DNA of 64,000 nucleotides from sequence record NC_041916.1, one strand, 5' to 3'. The position numbers were made by a program, and so were the translations under genes. Positions 5,049 to 29,700 of the stretch are shown here, piece after piece. The notes beneath the pieces are model-generated. The model did no database searches and was not told the origin of the DNA. It saw only the letters and a list, made by a program, of their open reading frames with translations. Position 1 is the first letter of the stretch; each line of letters starts with the position of its first letter.

Positions 5049-6623
5049 TTAAGAGTTGACTTCTTTAACTAAGTCTAAGAATTCCTGTTTAAGTGAACGG
5101 TCAAGTTCAACTTCAAAGAAATCGCCTTGGTCCGCATTTCGCATGACCGATTCATCGTCCAACATGCCATCTTCGATGATAGAAGACCACTGTCCGTTAC
5201 CAAGTTCTTTTAGGAACTCATTAACAGCAATGACTGCTTCGTTGTCCGTTGATAAACCAGATGTGCCTCGGTACACCGCACAAAGACTCTCCAACATTTC
5301 TTTGTCCGCTGCATCTAACGCGAAAATTTCATCCGTTAGACTGCGAGGTTGTTCTGGGTCGTAAACTGTACATACTAAGGTCGCCAGCTTGGTATAGCCC
5401 ATCTCATGCAACTTAACCGTCGCCATGGACATTGCTGCCATCAGTTGATCATGATCTAACGACAAGTAAATGTTGTAAGAAATGTCTTCTGAGAACGCCA
5501 GCTGGAGTAGCTTAAAGATATGGGGTTGCAGTTCGAATTCCCAGTTACTCGGGATTTGATCGTACACCCATTCCGCTAAGCGAGGGTTTTTAATCTTCAG
5601 CCCCATGCAAGGGATGTCAAAGATGCCATCGGTGAGACGACGGTCAGTGTTGTCATACATTCCCATAGAGAAGTATTCACCGTGAGCTTCTTCATCCGCT
5701 GAACTTACTTCTTCTTTAAGGAAGTAAATTTCGTAGAGACTGCGCTTTTCATTCATTTCATCTTTGGTCGTCAGACGTTTCTCACGAATACGAGACGAAG
5801 GTGCGGAGTACTGCTTCGCTACGGAATACAGTGACTTAGCGATGTTCTTCGAATTGTCTTTCGATGGAATGTGGGTAGAACCCAGACGACTAAAGAGAGC
5901 CGAATAGAAAGCATGGTTCACGTAAGAGTCTTCAGAGATCAAAGACAACTGTAGTGAGTTTACGCCGTTGCTGGAATAGAAGTAGTTCATGTAGTTACGG
6001 ATTTTGTTCCAACCATGGTGGTTAACGAACACATCCATATCTTTGAACAGTCCTGCGGTTACCACTTCTTTATATTCGTCACCGGTGATCTCTTTGGCTT
6101 TCTGCATCATGCCAGAGAAAATCGGAAAACATGGACGCATTAATAAAGCAAGTTCCGCTATCTGTTCATATTCCGTTGGGTTAATGGTTTGTTCAGCGTG
6201 GTATTCTCCTCGTGCCACGGTTTCCTTTAATCCTTTCGGTGGAGCACATACACCAGATTGCTTTAGGAAGTACGTGAAGTTACGTAAATCCACAACCTGA
6301 TAGATCTCTCTTACAATAGGTGTAAGACGTTCCACCAAGAAACGGTAGTCACGGTGGTTTCGTAATAAGTCGTCATCGATACCTTGCGCTTCGGCAAAAT
6401 TCGGGTCTAAGATGGACTTGGCTTTACGAAACAAATTGAACAATTCTTTTTGTTTGGTTTCAGATAACGAAGAAAAATATTCATTAACTGTTTCAAATAA
6501 ATCATCCTTGGTGGTACCACAATGAGTCTTGGAATGGGCAGCGAAGTTAACCGACTCTTCCCCGTGAGTTACGACCACACCTTTGAATTGTGATATGGTG
6601 GCATTGGTAATAGCGATTTCCAT
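5049..6623 (-). CDS. Non-virion RNA polymerase promoter-specificity subunit (phiKZ gp68-like)
   Basis: 524 aa, close to the size of gp68. Predicted largely helical, lies between the ChmC-like and PicA-like genes and has its own promoter motif. Confidence 0.75.
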   Translation of the reverse strand: MEIAITNATISQFKGVVVTHGEESVNFAAHSKTHCGTTKDDLFETVNEYFSSLSETKQKELFNLFRKAKSILDPNFAEAQGIDDDLLRNHRDYRFLVERLTPIVREIYQVVDLRNFTYFLKQSGVCAPPKGLKETVARGEYHAEQTINPTEYEQIAELALLMRPCFPIFSGMMQKAKEITGDEYKEVVTAGLFKDMDVFVNHHGWNKIRNYMNYFYSSNGVNSLQLSLISEDSYVNHAFYSALFSRLGSTHIPSKDNSKNIAKSLYSVAKQYSAPSSRIREKRLTTKDEMNEKRSLYEIYFLKEEVSSADEEAHGEYFSMGMYDNTDRRLTDGIFDIPCMGLKIKNPRLAEWVYDQIPSNWEFELQPHIFKLLQLAFSEDISYNIYLSLDHDQLMAAMSMATVKLHEMGYTKLATLVCTVYDPEQPRSLTDEIFALDAADKEMLESLCAVYRGTSGLSTDNEAVIAVNEFLKELGNGQWSSIIEDGMLDDESVMRNADQGDFFEVELDRSLKQEFLDLVKEVNS

Positions 6624-22036: not shown

Positions 22037-22445
22037 TGATCATTTCTCCTAAAGAAGTCGTAGGGTTAAATGGCTCGTAACAGTCAGCTATAGTGGAATC
22101 AAGATCCATTACTACAAGCAATTGGTTGATTTCACCACTGTGGTCGCGACCACGGTAATCACTGAGTTGTACCTTGATGCGAGGGTCCCAACCTGCACGG
22201 TGAGTGTATTCCTTGATACCTTCGTAAACTGAGATGTACGTAGGTTCTACCGCGAGGTTATTTCCGATCGTAGTGGTTAGATGACCGATGCGGTCGTATA
22301 GGTTTGTCGCATCCATGGAGTTGTACAACACAATGACGTCTTCCACGATGATCTGTGCAAACGGAGCGATCTCAATACGAGAGTGGTTGAGTTGATCGAA
22401 CGTGAGCAAGTTATCCACAATGGATCTGATATCGATAAAATACAT
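21990..22445 (-). CDS. Hypothetical protein (151 aa)
   Basis: GAGGT SD directly upstream of the ATG. Confidence 0.7.
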   Translation of the reverse strand: MYFIDIRSIVDNLLTFDQLNHSRIEIAPFAQIIVEDVIVLYNSMDATNLYDRIGHLTTTIGNNLAVEPTYISVYEGIKEYTHRAGWDPRIKVQLSDYRGRDHSGEINQLLVVMDLDSTIADCYEPFNPTTSLGEMISDNPTPDQMSNFIQS

Positions 22446-22453
22446 GACTACCT

Positions 22454-22759
22454 CTATTTAAAAAACTTAACTGAAAAACAATGTTGATTAGCTGGCTTAA
22501 TACCTACGTTGACTTCCGTAGGGATACCGTTGGCTTGATCAGCGATAGCCGTTCGAATATGAGCTCGAACAGGAGCAAGGTCGGATGGGGTACCTTGTAC
22601 GTGTTGAACGTGGCTCACATGGTAACCTAATTCGATCAAAGCTTCTTGGATTAAACCGATGGAGGTTTCTGATTCTGCACCGGGCGGTAAAGCATTGCTG
22701 AAATCTGATAAACAGATTCCAACTAAAGATAAGGTTTTGGTCATAATTGTTTCCGTCAT
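22454..22759 (-). CDS. Hypothetical protein (about 100 aa)
   Basis: First gene of the 22.7-20.1 kb operon; the start may be the second Met at 22744. Confidence 0.6.
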   Translation of the reverse strand: MTETIMTKTLSLVGICLSDFSNALPPGAESETSIGLIQEALIELGYHVSHVQHVQGTPSDLAPVRAHIRTAIADQANGIPTEVNVGIKPANQHCFSVKFFK

Positions 22760-22890
22760 TAAAGCGCGTGTAAGGGACTAGATGATTCACATCACAGTTA
22801 TCCTTTACACTGGGTTAGCGTGCATGGTTAAAGAGCCTTAAATGGCGTTACAGGAAGCTTACCGGTGATAGCTAAAAATAATCGGAAAGC

Positions 22891-23384
22891 AAAAAAATAC
22901 CATCTCCCGAAGGAGATGGTCATGCATTTTTTGTCACCTAAGTGACGCATGGAACGCAGTGGTGGTGTCGGAACACCCGAACTGTATTCTCCTAAGGAGA
23001 ACTAATAGGTATTGGAGGACCTATTAGAGAAGAACACAGCCGGCTGTAGAGACAGCAAGTTCGCCACATTTAAAAAATGGCCGGAAGGCGAACGTATCTT
23101 CAGAAGAGGAAAGGGAAAACCTCTAATGAGAATGTGGCGTCCCGTCGAATAGCAGCTCAATCGTGACAAGGGGCACGAACTACCCGACCGGACATAATAA
23201 GTGTCCGTCAATTTTCATTAACGGACGTGCGCTTTATATCTACTGATCTGTAACTAACCAATTGGGGGTTGGTAAGTTTGTGGTGAGACTTACGGCTATC
23301 TGCATCTCTGCCGTGATTCGCGGTAAGTACCTGTAGGTGTTCAAATTCGACATCTGAGCAGACGCTCGATTTATTCTCACCACA
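22891..23384 (-). ncRNA. Candidate ~490-nt structured non-coding RNA (family not recognised)
   Basis: About a dozen hairpins and long-range stems in an otherwise gene-dense genome, including a perfect 10-bp pair (23375-23384 with 23279-23288), a GAAA-capped stem (23203-23226) and a terminal cUUCGg terminator. No credible ORF. Confidence 0.5.
22899..22920 (-). terminator. Rho-independent terminator with a cUUCGg loop
   Basis: Minus strand ACCATCTCC-TTCG-GGAGATGGT followed by ATTTTTTTG. Confidence 0.85.
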
Positions 23385-23400
23385 TAGTATTACACTTCAG

Positions 23401-24105
23401 TTATATAGCGTTGATTAATTTTAGTTGGCGGTACTGCTTAGGACCTACGTCATAACGTTTGGTAAACTGCACAACAAAATAGTGATAGCTTACAAACCCG
23501 CACTCGGTCGCGATTTGTCGAGGTGTCAGTTTAGGTTTAAATAGCAACTTAGCTGCTTCTTCTAAACGCATGGTTACTAAACGTTCTTCGAAAGTACTGT
23601 CATAAACGATCTTCATAATCTCTTGCACTTCTTCTTTGCTGAGATTGAAGTCGTCTTGAACTCGAGTTAGGGTTAACTCAGGTTCGCGGAAGTGTCTGAT
23701 CAGGTATTTACGAAGTTCGTTTTGTGTCACTTCATTGATGCGTTTAGGATAAGTTTCTCGATCACCATCCTTAACTTTGCAGATTATTGATTTACGATAA
23801 TCGGTCGGCGACATCCCAGTGTAGTCTTTAAAACGACGCTCGAAGCTAGCACGAGCACCATAACCAACTTCATCATGAATGGTGAGAGGGTTAATCATGT
23901 CTAGACTAAGAAGGTGTTTAGCGTGTCCCATGCGAGCTTCTACTAACATCTCCTTAACCGATGGGTGGTTATGTTTCTCTAGGAAACGTCCCATGCTTGG
24001 CCCACTCATATTGAGCCGTGCGTAAATCTTAGCGGAGGCTTTGCTTTCTGCAAATAGTTCTTTGACTGCGGCTTCGATTTTTAAAATGGTTTCTTGGGTA
24101 TCCAT
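23401..24105 (-). CDS. AraC/XylS-family protein made of two tandem DNA-binding domains, no sensor domain
   Basis: Two AraC signature ends, VGYGARASFERRFKDYTGMSPTDYRK and IATECGFVSYHYFVVQFTKRYDVGPKQYRQ, each preceded by an R(M)xxAxxLL helix. Confidence 0.85.
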   Translation of the reverse strand: MDTQETILKIEAAVKELFAESKASAKIYARLNMSGPSMGRFLEKHNHPSVKEMLVEARMGHAKHLLSLDMINPLTIHDEVGYGARASFERRFKDYTGMSPTDYRKSIICKVKDGDRETYPKRINEVTQNELRKYLIRHFREPELTLTRVQDDFNLSKEEVQEIMKIVYDSTFEERLVTMRLEEAAKLLFKPKLTPRQIATECGFVSYHYFVVQFTKRYDVGPKQYRQLKLINAI

Positions 24106-24107
24106 AA

Positions 24108-24815
24108 CTACTTACTCTTAAAAGAATTGGCGTACGTTTGAGGATGTGTACGGAATTGTTGTTTAAATAACGTCACGAAGTATTGGAAGGAACATATCCC
24201 TATTTGCCCGTGTATGCTCGTCACATCAATCTTTGGGTTTTCACGGATTAAGTCAGAGGCGATTTTCATTCGTAGCGATTTACGCCAATCCGTGTAGGTC
24301 ATTCCGTAATAGTGTTCGAACATTTCACCCAAACACGACCCCGGTAGTTTAAATCGAGATTCTAGATCTCTCAAGGTGTAGTTACACTGTATGTTTTCGG
24401 TAACGAACTTCTTGATAGACTCTCGAAGTGATTCGGGATATAACACATCCATTTGTGGGACCGAGATAGGTTCAGTAATCACACCCGCATAGAACGTATA
24501 TTCCTCAGTAGGTGTGGTGGAAAAAGATTCCTGATAAACTCGGGTAAATGCGCGGTGCGAGCTGTACCCGCATTCCTTATAGACCGAAGTTGGTTTGACT
24601 CCATTCATCAGTAGCTGCTTGGCATGGCGCATACGAACACCCCGGAGATAAGCCCCGGGGGTGGTATCCAGTTGACGACGAAAGAGGTCAGTGACCCCAT
24701 TCATGCTCATCCCTAGTTGATCGCCGATATCTTTAGCTCGGATGGTACGGTGAAAGTTTTTATCGACCCATTTTAAGGTGTCTTGAAATAATTGTTCTCT
24801 GAACGATTGTTGCAT
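24108..24815 (-). CDS. AraC/XylS-family protein made of two tandem DNA-binding domains
   Basis: RMRHAKQLL...ECGYSSHRAFTRVYQESFSTTP and RMKIASDLI...IGICSFQYFVTLFKQQFRTHPQTY. Confidence 0.85.
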   Translation of the reverse strand: MQQSFREQLFQDTLKWVDKNFHRTIRAKDIGDQLGMSMNGVTDLFRRQLDTTPGAYLRGVRMRHAKQLLMNGVKPTSVYKECGYSSHRAFTRVYQESFSTTPTEEYTFYAGVITEPISVPQMDVLYPESLRESIKKFVTENIQCNYTLRDLESRFKLPGSCLGEMFEHYYGMTYTDWRKSLRMKIASDLIRENPKIDVTSIHGQIGICSFQYFVTLFKQQFRTHPQTYANSFKSK

Positions 24816-24827
24816 GGTAATAAACCT

Positions 24828-25976
24828 TTAATGTAGTTCTATGTTTTTGACTCCGACTTCGATGTACTTTTTGAATTGCTCGGTGTCCTTTAAACGCATT
24901 ACACGTTCTGGATGTTTGCGAGCTTCTGTCGGGGTCAAGCCGAAATGACGTTTAAAAGAAGTACAGAACGAACTGCGCTTGCCACTGGTCGCTACGCTGA
25001 AAATACGTTCCATACTCCATTTGGTGTTTAGAATAAGGTATAGTGAAGCTTCGAGTTCTAATGCACGGTAAACACATTTAGCGTTCATCCCAGTGGCGTG
25101 TAAGAACATCTTAGTCCAATTACCGTAATGAACACCGTAGAACTTTTGGATGTCTCGGATAGGTTGATGGTCTGTAAAGACTTCTTCCGCGAGGTGTTCT
25201 AAGATCTCATCCATCAAATGTTGGTTAACCCAACGTTGCTCCCCACACACTATCGCGGTAAAACCGTAGCTGTGTTCACGACCGTAGTCGAACGTCGTCT
25301 TCCCGTAATACTTTTTAAACATGAGATTAAAACCAGTGATGCGGGTTTGACGAACGTGTTTTAAAATAGTACGTTTGATCCAACCTCTCTGTTCAATCTG
25401 CTTAGCAATGTGATCACATTGTATCTTAATCAAGTATTCCTTAGGGTAGAGTCCGTTGGCTCGTTTAAAAGCACGGCGAACACTGACATCAGCAAATACC
25501 GTATCTTCCATCACTTCACTGACATTAACGATACGGGTGAAGTTTTGATCAATCACTTCCTTTAAACGAATCGCCACTTCGTTCGGGGTGTCAGTTGAAG
25601 GGGATTTACCTTCGGTCTCCATCTTAAACGCGATGCGATGTTTAATCGGTGATAACTTAGCGTGATGGATGTACCAATTCGTAAAGCGATGGACGTTTTC
25701 ATAAAGTAAGTCTTTCATGATCTCGCTAATAGGACGATCGGTTCGAGTAACTTCATGCATAGCGTATTCGCTGCGAAGTTTACCTAAGTAGTATTTAGGG
25801 CTTTCCAACCCATCCCTTGCAAACGCGTAACGTAATTGGTGAGGTCCAACGTTAAACGTTTCAGCGACATCCCGTGCCATGGTAATCGATTTAAAATTAT
25901 GCTTGATGTAATCGAGCGTGCGTTTTACCAATGCATCTTGGGTTTCTGGTAAAGAAGGAATGTAAGCAACGGACAT
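24828..25976 (-). CDS. AraC/XylS-family protein made of three tandem, more divergent DNA-binding domains
   Basis: Three ~100-aa units starting LDYIKHNF, LKEVIDQNF and ILEHLAEEVF, and ending F..W..HAKLSP.KHR, F.LMFKKYYGKT..DY and F..SFKRHFGLTPTEARK. Confidence 0.8.
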   Translation of the reverse strand: MSVAYIPSLPETQDALVKRTLDYIKHNFKSITMARDVAETFNVGPHQLRYAFARDGLESPKYYLGKLRSEYAMHEVTRTDRPISEIMKDLLYENVHRFTNWYIHHAKLSPIKHRIAFKMETEGKSPSTDTPNEVAIRLKEVIDQNFTRIVNVSEVMEDTVFADVSVRRAFKRANGLYPKEYLIKIQCDHIAKQIEQRGWIKRTILKHVRQTRITGFNLMFKKYYGKTTFDYGREHSYGFTAIVCGEQRWVNQHLMDEILEHLAEEVFTDHQPIRDIQKFYGVHYGNWTKMFLHATGMNAKCVYRALELEASLYLILNTKWSMERIFSVATSGKRSSFCTSFKRHFGLTPTEARKHPERVMRLKDTEQFKKYIEVGVKNIELH

Positions 25977-26009
25977 AATAATAATCCTTAAATGAAAAAA
26001 TAAACATAA

Positions 26010-26039
26010 CCCCTACCCCGCTTGTGACAGGATAGGGGG
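26010..26039 (-). terminator. Terminator between the 26047 gene and the AraC cluster
   Basis: Minus strand CCCCTATCC...GGGTAGGGG stem followed by TTATGTTTATTTTTT. Confidence 0.6.
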
Positions 26040-26046
26040 AACTAAG

Positions 26047-26820
26047 TTATACGACCAAACGAGAAGTCCAGTCTACGCTTTCTTGGGAACTGTTGCGGTA
26101 AGCTTGTAAGAAAGCTTCTACGGCGGTCTTAGGTCTTGGGTTAAGCTCTACGACGACGTTGTCTTTCTCTAAGTAACCAAAGCTTTCAACGTGCACAGCT
26201 TCTTCAGGATCAATGGTTACCCATCCGTCTTCTAAAGCAAGTTCGGCTTTACGATCCACACTACGTTTCTCGTAGAAGTCTTTTACTTGTTGTGTGGTGA
26301 CGATATCACTCTTCATCAAGTACACGATGTCTTCTACGCTTAACTCCAGCATATCCCCATCGATACTGTTGATCAAATCGTAACATTCGTTTTGATTAGG
26401 ATACACTTCCGCCCAATACCACTCTTTAGCTCTGGTGTCTACGTATAGCTCGTAGACCTTCCCTTCACGACTCACCGCGTTCCCTAAGAACCCCGGTAGT
26501 ACGTAAAGCTCTAACCCTTCCCATGTTAACATACAACTTAAATACGGTGCAGGTACCGCGTAATCTTTGTAAGTTGGTAATAACACTTCTTTAAAGCACA
26601 AATGTTCTGCTTGATCCACTAAGTGAATAGGAAACCCTTCTTTCAGCTTCGCTAATTGCTTCACCCAGTTTTGTGCTCTGGTTAATCGTACTTGCTTATG
26701 TCCTTTGATCGTGAACATGATGTTGTTCTGGCGATTAGGACGACCGTTCCCAGTCACTATCGTACCGTGAACGTGATGCACGTTCGTATTCGGTATCGTT
26801 TCTATCACTACCATACTCAT
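26047..26820 (-). CDS. Hypothetical protein with a NUMOD4-like segment
   Basis: VLPGFLGNAVSREGKVY resembles the NUMOD4 IPGYExYxVSNxGRV motif; no HNH motif follows; AGGAG SD. Confidence 0.55.
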   Translation of the reverse strand: MSMVVIETIPNTNVHHVHGTIVTGNGRPNRQNNIMFTIKGHKQVRLTRAQNWVKQLAKLKEGFPIHLVDQAEHLCFKEVLLPTYKDYAVPAPYLSCMLTWEGLELYVLPGFLGNAVSREGKVYELYVDTRAKEWYWAEVYPNQNECYDLINSIDGDMLELSVEDIVYLMKSDIVTTQQVKDFYEKRSVDRKAELALEDGWVTIDPEEAVHVESFGYLEKDNVVVELNPRPKTAVEAFLQAYRNSSQESVDWTSRLVV

Positions 26821-26867
26821 TTACTCCTGTTAAACCTATAAATCTAGTTGAATCAGTTTTACATTAC

Positions 26868-26891
26868 TACCAGAGTAATATAGATTCATAA
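26868..26891 (-). promoter_or_regulatory. Putative early promoter
   Basis: Minus strand TTATGAAT-CTATATTAC-TCTGGTA; contains the exact phiKZ early consensus TATATTAC. Confidence 0.7.
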
Positions 26892-26930
26892 ATGAATTAC
26901 TTAATCCCTTAGTCGGTATTAAACATTCTC

Positions 26931-27032
26931 GTTGAAGAGTACACTCCTTTTATCGTGTTTACGTACTTCGTACTACAACACTCACCGTTCACTACTCGTA
27001 CCTCATAGTTCACTCTAAGGAGTACTCTCAAC
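26931..27032. repeat. Interrupted inverted repeat enclosing a G-poor loop with a 21-bp-period direct repeat
   Basis: GTTGAAGAGTACACTCCTT (26931-26949) pairs with AAGGAGTACTCTCAAC (27017-27032) with two bulges; CTCAnnGTTCACT occurs at 26981 and 27002. Confidence 0.6.
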
Positions 27033-27122
27033 TCAAATGCAATAAAAACCCTTTCCCATCCTTTTCAGGGGGTCTTCGACGGTTCTTTTAGTTACTATAT
27101 AATATATATCCGCACTAAAAGT

Positions 27123-27857
27123 TTATTTTACAATAATCGTCTTACTAGGGGACATCATGGTACGCAACAGACATTCGGTAAAGTACTGATCTCGACGTAA
27201 GAGTTTGCGTTCTACAACCGTACTCAAGTTGTAATGACGAGTACCGGTGAGATTGATGATGAACTTACCCGATTGATTAAACCAATTGAACCCTGCTTTA
27301 GGATGACTGGTTCGAACGAATTGACAGAACTCTTCATACGCTTCATCTGCATTCATCCACAACATAGCCGTAAAGTCATTAATGGTTTGTTTGATGACGT
27401 CACGGTCTGGGAGATGATTGAATCGGTAAGTCAAAGAGATGAAAGGCAGATTCGCTTTTAACTGGTACGGTTCTTTCACCATGGTGTTTTTACAAACGAA
27501 CTTTAACGTGTACTTACGTTCGAGACTAGGGTCAAACGACACGAATACTTTAAAATGACTATCGTGATCGCTGATCATAATCGAATCGCTTACGGACGCC
27601 TTACAGCTCGTTGCCGTGATGTAGTACGAGATGTCATGGTGTTTAAGTAAAGAGTCATCTGGCGCATTCTTGTTTTCCTTGGTTAACACCACCGAACGAC
27701 GGTAAGAAAGTTGGTTGAACAGTTGAGCAATCCAACCTTCTGCATCTACCATGCTTCGGGTAATGTAAAAGAGTTCACCGATCTTGTTACGGTTTTCTTT
27801 AATCATCAGGATGTTGTCAAGTTTAGTGTTAGCGAATGAGAAAGGACAATTGTTCAT
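27123..27857 (-). CDS. Hypothetical protein, paralog of 27912..28667
   Basis: Shares the M.NCPF start, WI....NQL and MW.....A..E...F.R...P...FNWF. Confidence 0.8.
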   Translation of the reverse strand: MNNCPFSFANTKLDNILMIKENRNKIGELFYITRSMVDAEGWIAQLFNQLSYRRSVVLTKENKNAPDDSLLKHHDISYYITATSCKASVSDSIMISDHDSHFKVFVSFDPSLERKYTLKFVCKNTMVKEPYQLKANLPFISLTYRFNHLPDRDVIKQTINDFTAMLWMNADEAYEEFCQFVRTSHPKAGFNWFNQSGKFIINLTGTRHYNLSTVVERKLLRRDQYFTECLLRTMMSPSKTIIVK

Positions 27858-27911
27858 AATAAGTTCCTATAACGCGTTATAAGCGTTTTAATAAATGGGT
27901 GGGGTGGTTTA

Positions 27912-28667
27912 TTAAAGTATGAAATGTGTACGGAGTCCACTGAGCTCGTTGTAGGTTCCACGTAAGGTAATGACATCTCGTCTTAGAGGAACGTGAGTAG
28001 TGATCAGTTCTGTATCCATGAAATCAGAATTGATGATCGTAGGGCGAGTAATCGCGTGAGCAGATTTAAACCAGTTGAACTTAGGGTGAGGTTTCGCCAT
28101 GCGCATGAAAGCTTCAAGTTCTTTTTCTGCTTTAGACGAATCTAACCACATGTGTTGTGTGATGGTTTGTACCATGTCTTTGATACCTCGTTCATTCAAC
28201 ATCTTGAACTTGAAGTTAAATGAACGTTTATGGAACCACTCTTCAGCATTACTATTCTCGAATATCCCGCAAGGGAGCTCCCAAGTAAGATCATAACCGA
28301 CGCCTTCTTTGTACTCTAACTTGAATAAAAAGTCAGGATCCAGTTTATTACGAGATTCCGTTACGGTAATACTGCTGCGTCTACGGTTATGATGCTCGAT
28401 GGTGTACTGTCGGTAATCGTAATTTGCAGGAGAGATGCGGAAATGGTTTTTGTGAGCAAAGTTCAGATGTTGGGCACGGTCTTGATGGAGTTGATTAGAA
28501 ACATCCATGATCCATTGGAAAGCATTATCGAAACTATGATAGGCGTACACCAGTTTGCTCATCATCTCTAAACGAGATTCAAAAGTAAATGTACTGGTGG
28601 GTGGATGAGGAATAATTAAACCGTGTCGGTTATAACCCATGTGTAAAGTGAAAGGGCAGTTCTTCAT
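27912..28667 (-). CDS. Hypothetical protein, paralog of 27123..27857
   Basis: Same shared blocks; the GAGGAACTTATxATG leader is nearly identical in both genes. Confidence 0.8.
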   Translation of the reverse strand: MKNCPFTLHMGYNRHGLIIPHPPTSTFTFESRLEMMSKLVYAYHSFDNAFQWIMDVSNQLHQDRAQHLNFAHKNHFRISPANYDYRQYTIEHHNRRRSSITVTESRNKLDPDFLFKLEYKEGVGYDLTWELPCGIFENSNAEEWFHKRSFNFKFKMLNERGIKDMVQTITQHMWLDSSKAEKELEAFMRMAKPHPKFNWFKSAHAITRPTIINSDFMDTELITTHVPLRRDVITLRGTYNELSGLRTHFIL

Positions 28668-28679
28668 GATAAGTTCCTC

Positions 28680-28997
28680 TTAAAGGTTAGAAATTTTACG
28701 AATGATTTTGATTAGTGGTGTTACCCACATGGTAATTAACTCCCAGCCCGTCACTGGGTCAGGAGCAGGCGTCAGACTTCTTGTATGCGATTCTAAGCAA
28801 CGAAAGAGTGATCGGCTAAGGCTGACAGGATTAATTAAACGAAGCGCGTTATAACGTATCTTAGCGCCGTTTATCATAAAGTGTAAATCGTTGTCGTCGA
28901 TCTTTAATTCTAAATGGACTCCACCTAATACCATTCGGCTGTGTCCAGTTTGTTTAGTTTCTTCGATTAGAGTGTTGAGGGTTTGTTCTATGTTCAT
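28680..28997 (-). CDS. Hypothetical protein (105 aa)
   Basis: AGGA SD; packed against the next gene. Confidence 0.7.
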   Translation of the reverse strand: MNIEQTLNTLIEETKQTGHSRMVLGGVHLELKIDDNDLHFMINGAKIRYNALRLINPVSLSRSLFRCLESHTRSLTPAPDPVTGWELITMWVTPLIKIIRKISNL

Positions 28998-29026
28998 GTT
29001 ACGTCCTATGTAAACTAATACGGATA

Positions 29027-29080
29027 TTAGGAAAGAGTGGTCCCTTTCCTAATACGTCCCATGCCGAAGCACAGGACGTA
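29027..29080 (-). terminator. Tandem hairpins, one with a cUUCGg loop
   Basis: Minus strand TACGTCCTGTGC-TTCG-GCATGGGACGTA immediately followed by TTAGGAAAG-n8-CTTTCCTAA. Confidence 0.6.
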
Positions 29081-29085
29081 TTAAG

Positions 29086-29700
29086 TTAAATGGTGAATTC
29101 GTCGTATTTGACTTTAAGTTGGGTGTTGGGACCGACGTTGAGCGTGGACTCAGGGTAAAGTCGGAGTTTGCCACCCAAGACCTTAGGTTCAACCACCACC
29201 AAGAAATCGAAATGAGATAAACCAATGCGGTTGATCAAGTTACTACGCCCTAGGCTAAAAGCATTAGGGTAATGGTTATGAACCACTTCTTTCACTCGTT
29301 CACCTAAATACTCTTTGGCTTCTTTAAACTCGAAGTCGTCGTACGCTCTTAAATAACGTTCTAGGCTATGAGTTAACTGTTTGCTCACTTCCACTTTATC
29401 GAAGAACAACGATTGTTCAAATGCAAAGAGAAATGCTTCACGTTCGTAGAAACCCCCCGGGATGTCATTAGAAGGACGATAGATATCAGGAAGTCCACTG
29501 ATCTTCATAGTGAACTCACCCATCCCCGTACGGTGTTCTAGACGCTTGAGTCCGATGTTGATGGTAAGACCGCCGTATTCATGGGTGGTACGTCCTATGG
29601 TCAACCAACGATCAAAGATATCTTGGATGAATGGAAGTGGTTCTTTTTGTACAGTACGTAGGATGTGTACAAGTAAATAAGCGTCTTGTGGTTTTATCAC
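29086..29700 (-). CDS. Hypothetical protein, possible distant member of the 29.1-34.5 kb paralog family
   Basis: 204 aa; weak similarity to neighbours (LP.I..I...., F.MKISGLP). Confidence 0.7.
   Translation of the reverse strand: MIKPQDAYLLVHILRTVQKEPLPFIQDIFDRWLTIGRTTHEYGGLTINIGLKRLEHRTGMGEFTMKISGLPDIYRPSNDIPGGFYEREAFLFAFEQSLFFDKVEVSKQLTHSLERYLRAYDDFEFKEAKEYLGERVKEVVHNHYPNAFSLGRSNLINRIGLSHFDFLVVVEPKVLGGKLRLYPESTLNVGPNTQLKVKYDEFTI

What the first reader, a model, noticed from the sequence alone, without database searches (positions are those of the whole stretch)
23401..25976. Cluster of three sensor-less, multi-AraC-domain proteins (seven AraC DNA-binding domains in 2.6 kb)
Seen: three adjacent, nearly abutting genes consist only of 2, 2 and 3 tandem ~100-aa AraC/XylS DNA-binding domains, with no ligand-binding or dimerisation domain. 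The copies are highly diverged from each other. Known: AraC proteins normally carry one such domain; stand-alone ones (MarA, SoxS) activate by contacting host RNAP alpha-CTD, and host virulence or stress regulators such as ToxT, ExsA and Rob belong to this family. phiKZ-like phages use their own RNAPs inside a protein nucleus. Inference: these may be long-footprint DNA readers that reprogram or silence the host chromosome, titrate host RNAP, or regulate phage DNA inside the nucleus. A terminator lies just upstream (26010-26039) and no copy of the early promoter motif precedes the cluster, so its expression control is unexplained.
Basis: partly seen in the sequence, partly recalled or inferred. 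Interest (0 to 1): 0.75.

Follow-up and report, generated by a model that had tools for sequence, protein, structure and literature searches.

The report
Phage operon of tandem AraC DNA-binders
A giant, nucleus-forming Vibrio phage carries three back-to-back genes whose proteins are strings of 3, 2 and 2 AraC-type DNA-binding domains with no sensor part; they are probably always-on gene regulators made early in infection, but their DNA targets are unknown.

Summary
The window is Vibrio phage pTD1, a 239-kb nucleus-forming jumbo phage (Gorgonvirinae). Three minus-strand genes (gp142, gp141, gp140; 382, 235 and 234 aa) contain only AraC/XylS DNA-binding domains. Six of the seven pass Pfam's HTH_18 cut-off; the middle domain of gp142 is divergent but still AraC-like. 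All domains are basic, fold like MarA, SoxS and AdpA, and are under purifying selection.

The triplet is syntenic in all nine cultured Gorgonvirinae and in two divergent metagenomic relatives. A fourth protein of this kind (gp033, about 2.5 domains) lies elsewhere in the genome, directly behind a strong early promoter.

A conserved early-type promoter sits 0.9 kb upstream, before gp143, and a structurally conserved hairpin separates gp143 from the cluster. Read-through expression is therefore likely.

Tandem AraC-only proteins are rare but not unique: scattered, uncharacterised bacterial examples have 2 to 6 domains. RefSeq and UniProt already label these genes as AraC-type regulators, and Iyer et al. 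2021 noted AraC-like factors in this phage group.

Function and targets remain untested. This scan had already flagged the same operon on other DNA (s1-159642), with the same reading.

The parts
26862..26905 (-). Early-type promoter motif (AT-rich stretch + CTATATTAC + n5 + GTAGTA), centred at 26883, 56 nt upstream of the gp143 start codon. Probable promoter of the gp143-A-B-C unit.
   Evidence: Position-weight-matrix hit, score 26.1. It is one of 24 hits in the genome, all on the minus strand. A motif at the equivalent place occurs upstream of the gp143 homologue in all 8 relatives scanned.
26047..26820 (-). gp143, 257 aa, unknown function (PHROG 24322). It is the conserved upstream neighbour and the probable first gene of the transcription unit.
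   Evidence: The homologue sits directly upstream of the triplet in all relatives.
26010..26038 (-). G+C-rich 12-bp hairpin with an interrupted T-tract, lying between gp143 and gene A. Candidate partial terminator, attenuator or RNA-stability element.
   Evidence: The hairpin is present in all 8 genomes folded, with different stem sequences, at -16 to -23.5 kcal/mol and z -2.5 to -5.6. The tail plus ribosome-binding site (GTTTATTTTTTCATTTAAGGATTAT) is repeated exactly at one other gene start in the genome.
24828..25976 (-). Gene A (gp142), 382 aa, with three AraC-type DNA-binding domains: A1 at nt 25614-25964, A2 (divergent) at nt 25269-25622, A3 at nt 24900-25247. A beta-hairpin (aa 238-251) and a C-terminal helix complete the protein.
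   Evidence: Pfam HTH_18, 3 stretches, E 4.5e-23. Domain envelopes. AlphaFold2 model with mean pLDDT 75.5 showing three 7-helix units. Each unit matches single AraC DNA-binding domains in the PDB at TM 0.7-0.8.
24108..24815 (-). Gene B (gp141), 235 aa, with two AraC-type DNA-binding domains: B1 at nt 24483-24815, B2 at nt 24111-24467.
   Evidence: Pfam E 9.3e-28, 2 stretches. AlphaFold2 pLDDT 91.1 and pTM 0.51, i.e. well-folded domains with a free relative orientation. PDB matches to YesN, AdpA-DNA, MarA, SoxS and Rob at rmsd 1.2-2.8 A over about 100 residues.
23401..24105 (-). Gene C (gp140), 234 aa, with two AraC-type DNA-binding domains: C1 at nt 23779-24102, C2 at nt 23413-23763. RefSeq annotates a shorter 197-aa form.
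   Evidence: Pfam E 8.9e-27, 2 stretches. The full 234-aa frame is conserved in orthologues.

Best explanation
gp142, gp141 and gp140 are ligand-independent DNA-binding regulators of the AraC/XylS family. In them, the usual sensor/dimerisation domain has been replaced by covalent repetition of the DNA-binding domain.

Shown:
- Each protein is a chain of independently folded, basic, seven-helix AraC domains joined by short flexible linkers.
- The three genes are tightly packed paralogues. Profile comparisons (suggestive only) fit a two-domain ancestor that duplicated, with gp142 gaining a middle domain.
- The genes are conserved as a syntenic unit across the whole Gorgonvirinae subfamily, under purifying selection.

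Inferred:
- They are transcribed early, from the early-type promoter before gp143, by read-through of a conserved hairpin that probably lowers their dose relative to gp143.
- They are probably made in fixed proportions through close translational coupling.
- One AraC domain spans about 20 bp (MarA, Rob and AdpA complexes). A two-domain protein would therefore read a composite site of about 40 bp and the three-domain protein about 60 bp, each as a monomer and without an inducer.

My best guess for the target is the phage's own DNA: together with gp033 they would help set the phage's temporal programme, for example the early-to-middle switch. The reason is that the recognition helices change as fast as the phage genomes do, whereas the Vibrio and Photobacterium hosts are presumably much more alike.
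For: - Domain identity and count.
- Fold. Single AraC DNA-binding domains, including DNA complexes 3w6v, 1bl0 and 1d5y, match at rmsd 1.2-2.8 A.
- Charge: all seven domains have pI 8.6-9.7 and all orthologues but one have pI 9.0-9.9.
- Selection: dN/dS is 0.077 for B and 0.078 for C (pTD1 vs VP4B) and 0.20 for A (vs phiKT1028). dS is saturated, so the ratios are approximate.
- Synteny: the triplet keeps its gene lengths in 9 isolates and in 2 metagenomic contigs at 27-29% identity.
- Paralogy: the best profile pairs are B1-C1, A1-B1, B2-C2 and A3-B2.
- Promoter and hairpin: the early-type promoter before gp143 is conserved in all genomes. The hairpin is conserved in structure but not in sequence.
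- Fourth paralogue-like protein: gp033 has about 2.5 AraC domains and starts 48 nt behind a top-scoring early promoter. It is conserved in the same nine phages.
- Recognition helices are no more conserved than the rest of the domain and differ between genera.
- It is an open question what gives phiKZ-type non-virion RNAP its middle and late promoter specificity (PMC7598289).
Against: - There is no expression, localisation or binding data. No RNA run holding this sequence was listed, and that search was not RNA-specific.
- No repeated operator-like motif was found in pTD1 intergenic DNA beyond promoters, terminators and one leader.
- The base-contacting Arg/Lys equivalent to MarA R46/R96 is kept in only 5 of 14 helix-turn-helix units. 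Three units carry Asp or Glu there. Ordinary family members vary at these positions too.
- Jumbo-phage RNAPs have no alpha subunit (PMC7598289), so the canonical AraC activation contact cannot apply to phage polymerases.
- To act on phage DNA the proteins would have to be imported into the phage nucleus, which is unknown.
- The module is confined to one subfamily, so it cannot be a general chimallivirus mechanism.
Confidence: 0.4

Rival explanations
1. The proteins act on the host. Made early and left in the cytoplasm, they would bind the Vibrio chromosome or host RNA polymerase, as the stand-alone AraC domains MarA, SoxS and Rob do through alpha-CTD and sigma70 contacts. The effect would be to switch host genes on or off, or to titrate host RNAP, during the first minutes of infection.
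For: - The genes lie in an early region behind an early-type promoter, and gp033 is directly behind one.
- The closest solved structures are MarA, SoxS, RamA and Rob, which work by contacting bacterial RNAP.
- Phage RNAPs lack an alpha subunit (PMC7598289).
- Cytoplasmic early proteins meet host DNA first.
Against: - In the relatives Eric and Ariel no extranuclear DNA remains at 60 min, so host DNA is destroyed (PMC10587174). Any host effect can only be brief.
- Recognition helices diverge strongly between phages of closely related hosts.
- No close similarity to any cellular AraC protein was found: the best non-phage hits are at most about 40% identical over one domain in an exhaustive search of 1.84 billion representatives. 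Mimicry of a particular host regulator is therefore not indicated.
Confidence: 0.28
2. The proteins are architectural, low-specificity DNA binders. Multi-headed AraC chains would coat, bridge or compact DNA (phage DNA in the nucleus, or host DNA before its breakdown) rather than regulate particular promoters.
For: - Several DNA-binding heads on flexible linkers (pTM 0.42-0.51 despite good per-domain confidence).
- Basic charge throughout.
- Weak conservation of specificity residues.
- No repeated operator detected.
Against: - Three or four distinct paralogues are each kept for a long time with fixed domain numbers, which suggests non-redundant, specific roles.
- The hairpin upstream suggests a low dose, which is unlike abundant nucleoid proteins.
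Confidence: 0.17
3. Some or all domains no longer bind DNA and serve as protein-interaction modules or decoys, for example against a host factor or defence system that recognises AraC-like folds.
For: - Asp or Glu occupies the MarA R46-equivalent position in B1, B2 and C2, and A2 scores poorly against HTH_18.
Against: - Every domain is basic.
- The helix-turn-helix geometry is retained.
- Ordinary AraC family members also vary at these positions, e.g. P0091 has Asp there.
Confidence: 0.08

Closest known systems
MarA / SoxS / RamA (stand-alone AraC-family DNA-binding domains of enterobacteria)
   Same: No sensor or dimerisation domain. The same seven-helix, two-HTH fold (rmsd 2-3 A). Similar basic charge. 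Activity presumably set by protein amount rather than by a ligand.
   Different: Those are single-domain monomers reading one ~20-bp marbox and activating host sigma70 RNAP. Here 2 or 3 domains are fused in one chain, sequence identity is only 12-20%, the genes are phage-borne, and the partner polymerase, if any, is unknown.
Rob and classical AraC/XylS regulators (AraC, XylS, ToxT, Rns, ExsA)
   Same: HTH_18 (PF12833) DNA-binding domain.
   Different: Classical members have one DNA-binding domain plus an N- or C-terminal ligand-binding or dimerisation domain, and reach long or repeated sites by dimerising. The phage proteins have no such domain and would reach long sites through covalent tandem domains.
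Uncharacterised bacterial tandem-AraC proteins (e.g. Clostridia MAG MEE1013532.1; metagenomic P0023, P0081, P0025 and P0011; UniProt A0A4R2H9X3)
   Same: Proteins made only of 2, 3 or up to 6 HTH_18 domains. At least two sit in ordinary bacterial gene neighbourhoods.
   Different: Several are recent internal duplications with near-identical halves. The phage domains are anciently diverged (10-21% identity) and organised as a three-gene paralogous operon. None of the bacterial proteins has a known function, as far as I could find.
AraC-like HTH transcription factors of 'group 1' jumbo phages noted by Iyer et al. 2021 (PMC7824862; example QGZ14570.1)
   Same: Probably this very family (the identity of QGZ14570.1 was not checked). 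The paper predicts them to be transcriptional activators.
   Different: The paper gives one sentence. It does not mention the tandem architecture, the three-gene operon, the fourth protein or the promoter context.

Membership tests
AraC/XylS family (Pfam HTH_18, PF12833) | A ~100-residue DNA-binding domain with two helix-turn-helix motifs joined by a long helix | tested here: met
   Six of seven domains score above the Pfam cut-off. A2 is below it (15.3 bits) but is supported by hhalign (97% to B1) and by its predicted fold.
AraC/XylS family (classical two-domain regulators) | A companion ligand-binding or dimerisation domain (AraC_binding, cupin, etc.) | tested here: not met
   No other Pfam domain is present. 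The AraC domains tile the whole length of each protein.
AraC/XylS family | Sequence-specific DNA binding through helices 3 and 6 | not testable with these tools
   Indirect evidence only: basic pI and fold. The MarA R46/R96-equivalent Arg/Lys is kept in 5 of 14 HTH units.
MarA/SoxS/Rob-type sensor-less activators | A single DNA-binding domain acting as a monomer | tested here: not met
   There are 2 or 3 domains per chain.
MarA/SoxS/Rob-type sensor-less activators | Activation by contact with host RNAP alpha-CTD or sigma70 region 4 | not testable with these tools
   No binding data. Phage RNAPs lack an alpha subunit (PMC7598289).
PHROG 7620 (phage 'transcriptional regulator') | Full-length profile match | tested here: met
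   E 7e-175, 9e-75 and 2e-63 for A, B and C. By tblastn the family is confined to Vibrio and Photobacterium jumbo phages.

The most novel reading that the evidence does not exclude
The four multi-AraC proteins (gp140-142 plus gp033) are the promoter-specificity factors that this clade's non-virion RNA polymerase lacks. Imported into the phage nucleus, each would read a 40-60-bp composite site with its covalently linked heads and recruit or position the phage polymerase at middle-gene promoters. That would be a new way for AraC domains to work (no ligand, no dimer, no bacterial RNAP) and a first answer to how chimallivirus middle or late promoters are chosen.
Probability: 0.1. Interest if true: 0.8.

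Novelty: new variant of a known kind. Interest (0 to 1): 0.45.

Why it matters
Nucleus-forming jumbo phages transcribe their genes with their own polymerases. What tells those polymerases which middle and late genes to read is still unclear (PMC7598289). No phage-encoded sequence-specific regulator turned up for this family in the literature searches made here.

This subfamily offers a conserved, early-placed set of four candidate DNA readers with an unusual build: AraC domains strung together instead of paired with a sensor. It is a concrete, testable entry point in phages that already have genetic and imaging tools (phiKT1019/Eric and phiKT1028/Ariel).

The architecture is also of general interest. 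It shows how AraC domains can be concatenated into long-footprint readers, and the same build exists unstudied in scattered bacteria.

The value is limited by three things: function is entirely inferred, the module is clade-restricted, and the AraC identity is already in public annotation.

Tried and rejected
- Protein-DNA complex prediction (gene B protein with 60 bp of promoter DNA) was counted but not folded by the tool. It is no evidence either way.
- Expression data: no listed RNA run was shown to hold this sequence. Only five metagenomic DNA runs hold 9-29% of the sampled words. The search used kind 'any', which is not a dedicated RNA search.
- Single-protein scan of IMG/VR found nothing. 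The alignment-based scan returned only the already known isolates.
- Word-indexed homologue searches returned only the nearest orthologues. The exhaustive phmmer search was needed.
- Search for a multi-copy operator in pTD1 intergenic DNA: only early promoters, terminator hairpins and one conserved leader turned up. The conserved palindromic element upstream of gp143 is single-copy.
- PhuZ pseudogene in the ORF-less stretch downstream of gene C: no trace. Loss of PhuZ in pTD1 is already published (PMC10587174, PMC11724907).
- Rfam scan of 22300-27200: no match.
- Literature search for 'tandem/two/double AraC' returned only noise from Arachis and arachidonate papers. 'AraC' plus 'Chimalliviridae' gave only a plasmid-construct mention.
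- Recent capture from the host was rejected. No cellular protein comes close, and the seven domains are as far from each other as from MarA.
Full report
**Identity of the window.** The region is 100% identical to Vibrio phage pTD1 (NC_041916, 239,276 bp; window position + 124,000 = record position). pTD1 belongs to Gorgonvirinae, genus Tidunavirus. Published work places it in the nucleus-forming Chimalliviridae: it encodes chimallin (ORF65) and lacks the PhuZ tubulin (PMC10587174; PMC11724907).

**Check of the observation.** Three minus-strand ORFs lie exactly where stated: A = gp142, 25976..24828, 382 aa; B = gp141, 24815..24108, 235 aa; C = gp140, 24105..23401, 234 aa. The gaps between them are 12 and 2 nt.
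- Pfam finds only HTH_18/HTH_AraC, in 3, 2 and 2 stretches, with E 4.5e-23, 9.3e-28 and 8.9e-27.
- A six-frame search of the whole genome scores six domains above the 33.6-bit cut-off (B1 61.8, C1 50.4, C2 47.2, A1 41.7, B2 39.1, A3 35.8). A2 scores 15.3 bits.
- A2 is nevertheless AraC-like. Its orthologue profile matches B1 at 97% probability, and the AlphaFold2 model shows a seven-helix unit there.
- A home-made AraC profile gives envelopes A 5-121, 119-236, 244-359; B 1-111, 117-235; C 2-109, 115-231. The domains therefore tile the proteins, and no room is left for a sensor or dimerisation domain.
- The seven domains are 10-21% identical to each other and 12-20% identical to E. coli MarA.

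**Structure.**
- The model of B (24-sequence alignment) has mean pLDDT 91 but pTM 0.51. The model of A (7 sequences) has pLDDT 75.5 and pTM 0.42, with a disordered 102-126 linker. These are well-folded beads on flexible strings.
- Foldseek against the PDB returns only single AraC DNA-binding domains, each covering about 100 residues: YesN, the AdpA-DNA complex (rmsd 1.2 A), MarA-DNA, SoxS, Rob and RamA.
- No solved structure has tandem AraC domains.
- Sequence search of the PDB agrees.

**Are the genes real and functional?**
- Orthologues of all three, with conserved lengths and no stops, occur in VP4B (A 71%, B 76% identity), phiKT1028 (48%, 41%), and phiKT1019, Aphrodite1, USC-1, 5 TSL-2019, 2 TSL-2019 and PDCC-1 (28-37%). 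The order is always gp143-homologue, A, B, C.
- Two metagenomic contigs whose B protein is only 27-29% identical keep the same layout, followed by PhuZ and the DNA polymerase.
- dN/dS is 0.077 for B and 0.078 for C (vs VP4B) and 0.20 for A (vs phiKT1028). dS is saturated, so these ratios are approximate.
- Every domain has pI 8.6-9.7, and the orthologues have pI 9.0-9.9 with one exception.

**History of the cluster.** Profile-profile scores are highest for B1-C1, A1-B1, B2-C2 and A3-B2, and A2 is closest to the N-terminal type. The simplest reading is a two-domain ancestor duplicated twice, with A acquiring a middle domain. The resolution is limited, so this is an inference.

**DNA-contact residues.** I aligned the domains to MarA, translated from E. 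coli K-12.
- The positions equivalent to MarA R46 and R96 are the base-contacting arginines of helices 3 and 6. This assignment comes from my recollection of the MarA-DNA structure, 1BL0.
- They are Arg or Lys in only 5 of the 14 helix-turn-helix units: A2-H3, A3-H3, C1-H3, B1-H6 and C1-H6.
- B1, B2 and C2 have Asp or Glu in helix 3.
- Ordinary single-domain family members in the same alignment also vary there, and one has Asp. This does not argue strongly against DNA binding, but it does leave specificity open.
- Across nine orthologue sets the recognition helices are no more conserved than the rest of the domain. They differ between the two genera, while the long linking helix 4 is the best conserved in most domains.

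**Transcription context.**
- A k-mer and matrix search of the genome recovers a clear motif: an AT-rich stretch, then CTATATTAYY, n3, GTGTA. There are 24 hits, all on the minus strand and nearly all intergenic. Its form and placement match the description of early (virion-RNAP) promoters of phiKZ-like phages (PMC7598289).
- One lies at 26883, 56 nt before the gp143 start codon. A promoter-like hit lies about 60-100 nt before the gp143 homologue in all eight relatives scanned.
- Between gp143 and A every genome has a 10-14-bp hairpin whose sequence differs but whose structure is kept (-16 to -23.5 kcal/mol, z -2.5 to -5.6). It is followed by a T-rich tail that is often imperfect, and by the ribosome-binding site TAAGGA.
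- The most economical reading is one early transcription unit, gp143-A-B-C, with the hairpin acting as a leaky terminator or stabiliser that sets a lower level for the three regulators. This is inferred. No RNA run holding the sequence was listed, and that search was not RNA-specific.
- The tight spacing or overlap of A, B and C in all genomes suggests translational coupling.

**A fourth member outside the window.**
- The genome search found an eighth HTH_18 match at genome 29096-29320.
- It belongs to gp033 (28460-29404, minus strand, GTG start, 314 aa, annotated 'hypothetical'). The protein has one clear AraC domain (E 1.2e-11), a second weaker one, and a C-terminal half-domain. Its pI is 9.0.
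- Its start codon is 48 nt behind one of the best early-promoter matches (score 38.6). phiKT1028 has the same arrangement.
- gp033 is conserved in exactly the same nine phages.
- This clade therefore carries four sensor-less multi-AraC proteins, and at least one is almost certainly early.

**How unusual is the architecture?**
- Among 50,697 phage records, full-length relatives occur only in these Vibrio and Photobacterium jumbo phages.
- In an exhaustive HMMER search of 1.84 billion representative proteins, only five hits are below 1e-30, and all are orthologues.
- Among the best 150 hits, about 30 unrelated proteins carry two or more AraC domains. They include proteins made only of 2 domains (215-277 aa), 3 domains (370 aa) or 6 domains (677 aa).
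- One is a Clostridia MAG protein, and two sit in plainly bacterial neighbourhoods.
- Several have near-identical halves, which points to recent independent duplications.
- AlphaFold DB clusters also contain cellular proteins that align over both domains. BFVD suggests one or two other phages with a similar build, e.g. Bordetella phage PHB04.
- The list is biased by the two-domain query, so it shows existence and not frequency. I found no paper on such proteins.

**Prior knowledge.**
- RefSeq calls the three genes 'transcriptional regulator'.
- UniProt calls them 'HTH araC/xylS-type domain-containing protein'.
- PHROG 7620 is labelled 'transcriptional regulator'.
- Iyer et al. [quoted passage not shown]
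- None of these mentions the tandem build, the operon or gp033.
- This scan had already reported the same operon on other DNA with the same conclusion (s1-159642), and a 2.5-domain protein (s1-159679).

**Mechanism.** What is shown is the anatomy, the conservation and the promoter context. I infer that the proteins bind DNA constitutively, each domain covering about 20 bp, so that covalent tandem domains replace the dimerisation used by classical AraC proteins.

The target is undecided.
- Phage DNA (0.4) is favoured because the recognition helices evolve as fast as the phage genomes while the hosts are, I assume, much more alike, and because a long-lived set of four distinct paralogues suggests specific roles in the phage's own programme.
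- A host-directed role (0.28) is favoured by early timing, by the mechanism of MarA and SoxS, and by the absence of an alpha subunit in phage polymerases. Against it, host DNA is gone by 60 min in the relatives.
- An architectural role (0.17) and loss of DNA binding (0.08) remain possible.

**Verdict.** This is a real, conserved, uncharacterised module: a new variant of a known family. It is moderately interesting as a testable handle on gene regulation in nucleus-forming phages. Its basic identity is already annotated and its function is wholly inferred.

Noticed in passing
window 22899-23430 (minus strand): The ORF-less ~500 nt downstream of gene C looks like a separate early-transcribed non-coding RNA. 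An early-type promoter motif (score 20.9) overlaps the last codons and stop of gene C at 23408. A strong terminator (9-bp stem plus T7) lies at 22920-22899. Sequence blocks (GGTGTATACCGCG, GTATAAAGCG, AGCCGGCTG, CAGTTCGGGTG) are conserved in 8 divergent relatives, whether or not PhuZ follows. There is no Rfam match.
   Followed up: partly
outside the window: genome 28460-29404 (L017:2461-3405, minus strand): gp033, annotated 'hypothetical protein', is a fourth sensor-less AraC protein with about 2.5 domains and a GTG start. It starts 48 nt behind a top-scoring early promoter at genome 29460 and is conserved in the same nine phages.
   Followed up: yes
window 23401-24105: RefSeq annotates gp140 as 197 aa (record 147401-147994). 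The 234-aa frame starting at window 24105 is conserved in all orthologues and is needed to complete domain C1, so the deposited start is probably too far downstream.
   Followed up: yes
genome 61273, 111593, 135112 (window 11112), 195782, 206496: A sub-class of the early motif carries TTGACAT, an 18-nt spacer, then TATATA. That is a good sigma70-type -35/-10 pair superimposed on the phage motif. Two or three copies share a conserved ~45-nt leader. This is odd for a phage thought to be independent of host RNAP.
   Followed up: partly
window ~27085-27120 (minus strand): A near-palindromic AT-rich element (TTAGTGCGGATATATATTATATAGTAACTAA) lies between gp144 and gp143. It is conserved in all seven isolates about 290-320 nt upstream of the gp143 homologue and is single-copy in the genome. 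It could be a promoter of another class or a protein-binding site.
   Followed up: partly
window 27123-28667: gp144 and gp145 are tandem paralogues (PHROG 20775, unknown function), both starting with M(N/K)NCPF.
   Followed up: no
window 22790-23400 versus L004, L005, L008, L003, L015 and L016: In Aphroditevirus and the metagenomic relatives the PhuZ tubulin gene follows the AraC cluster and the non-coding stretch. In pTD1, VP4B and phiKT1028 it is missing without any remnant. Loss of PhuZ in this clade is already published.
   Followed up: yes
L004, L005 and L008, about position 6521-6536: The three Aphroditevirus genomes scanned have an early-motif-like hit (score 18.4) inside gene B. It may be chance or an internal promoter.
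   Followed up: no
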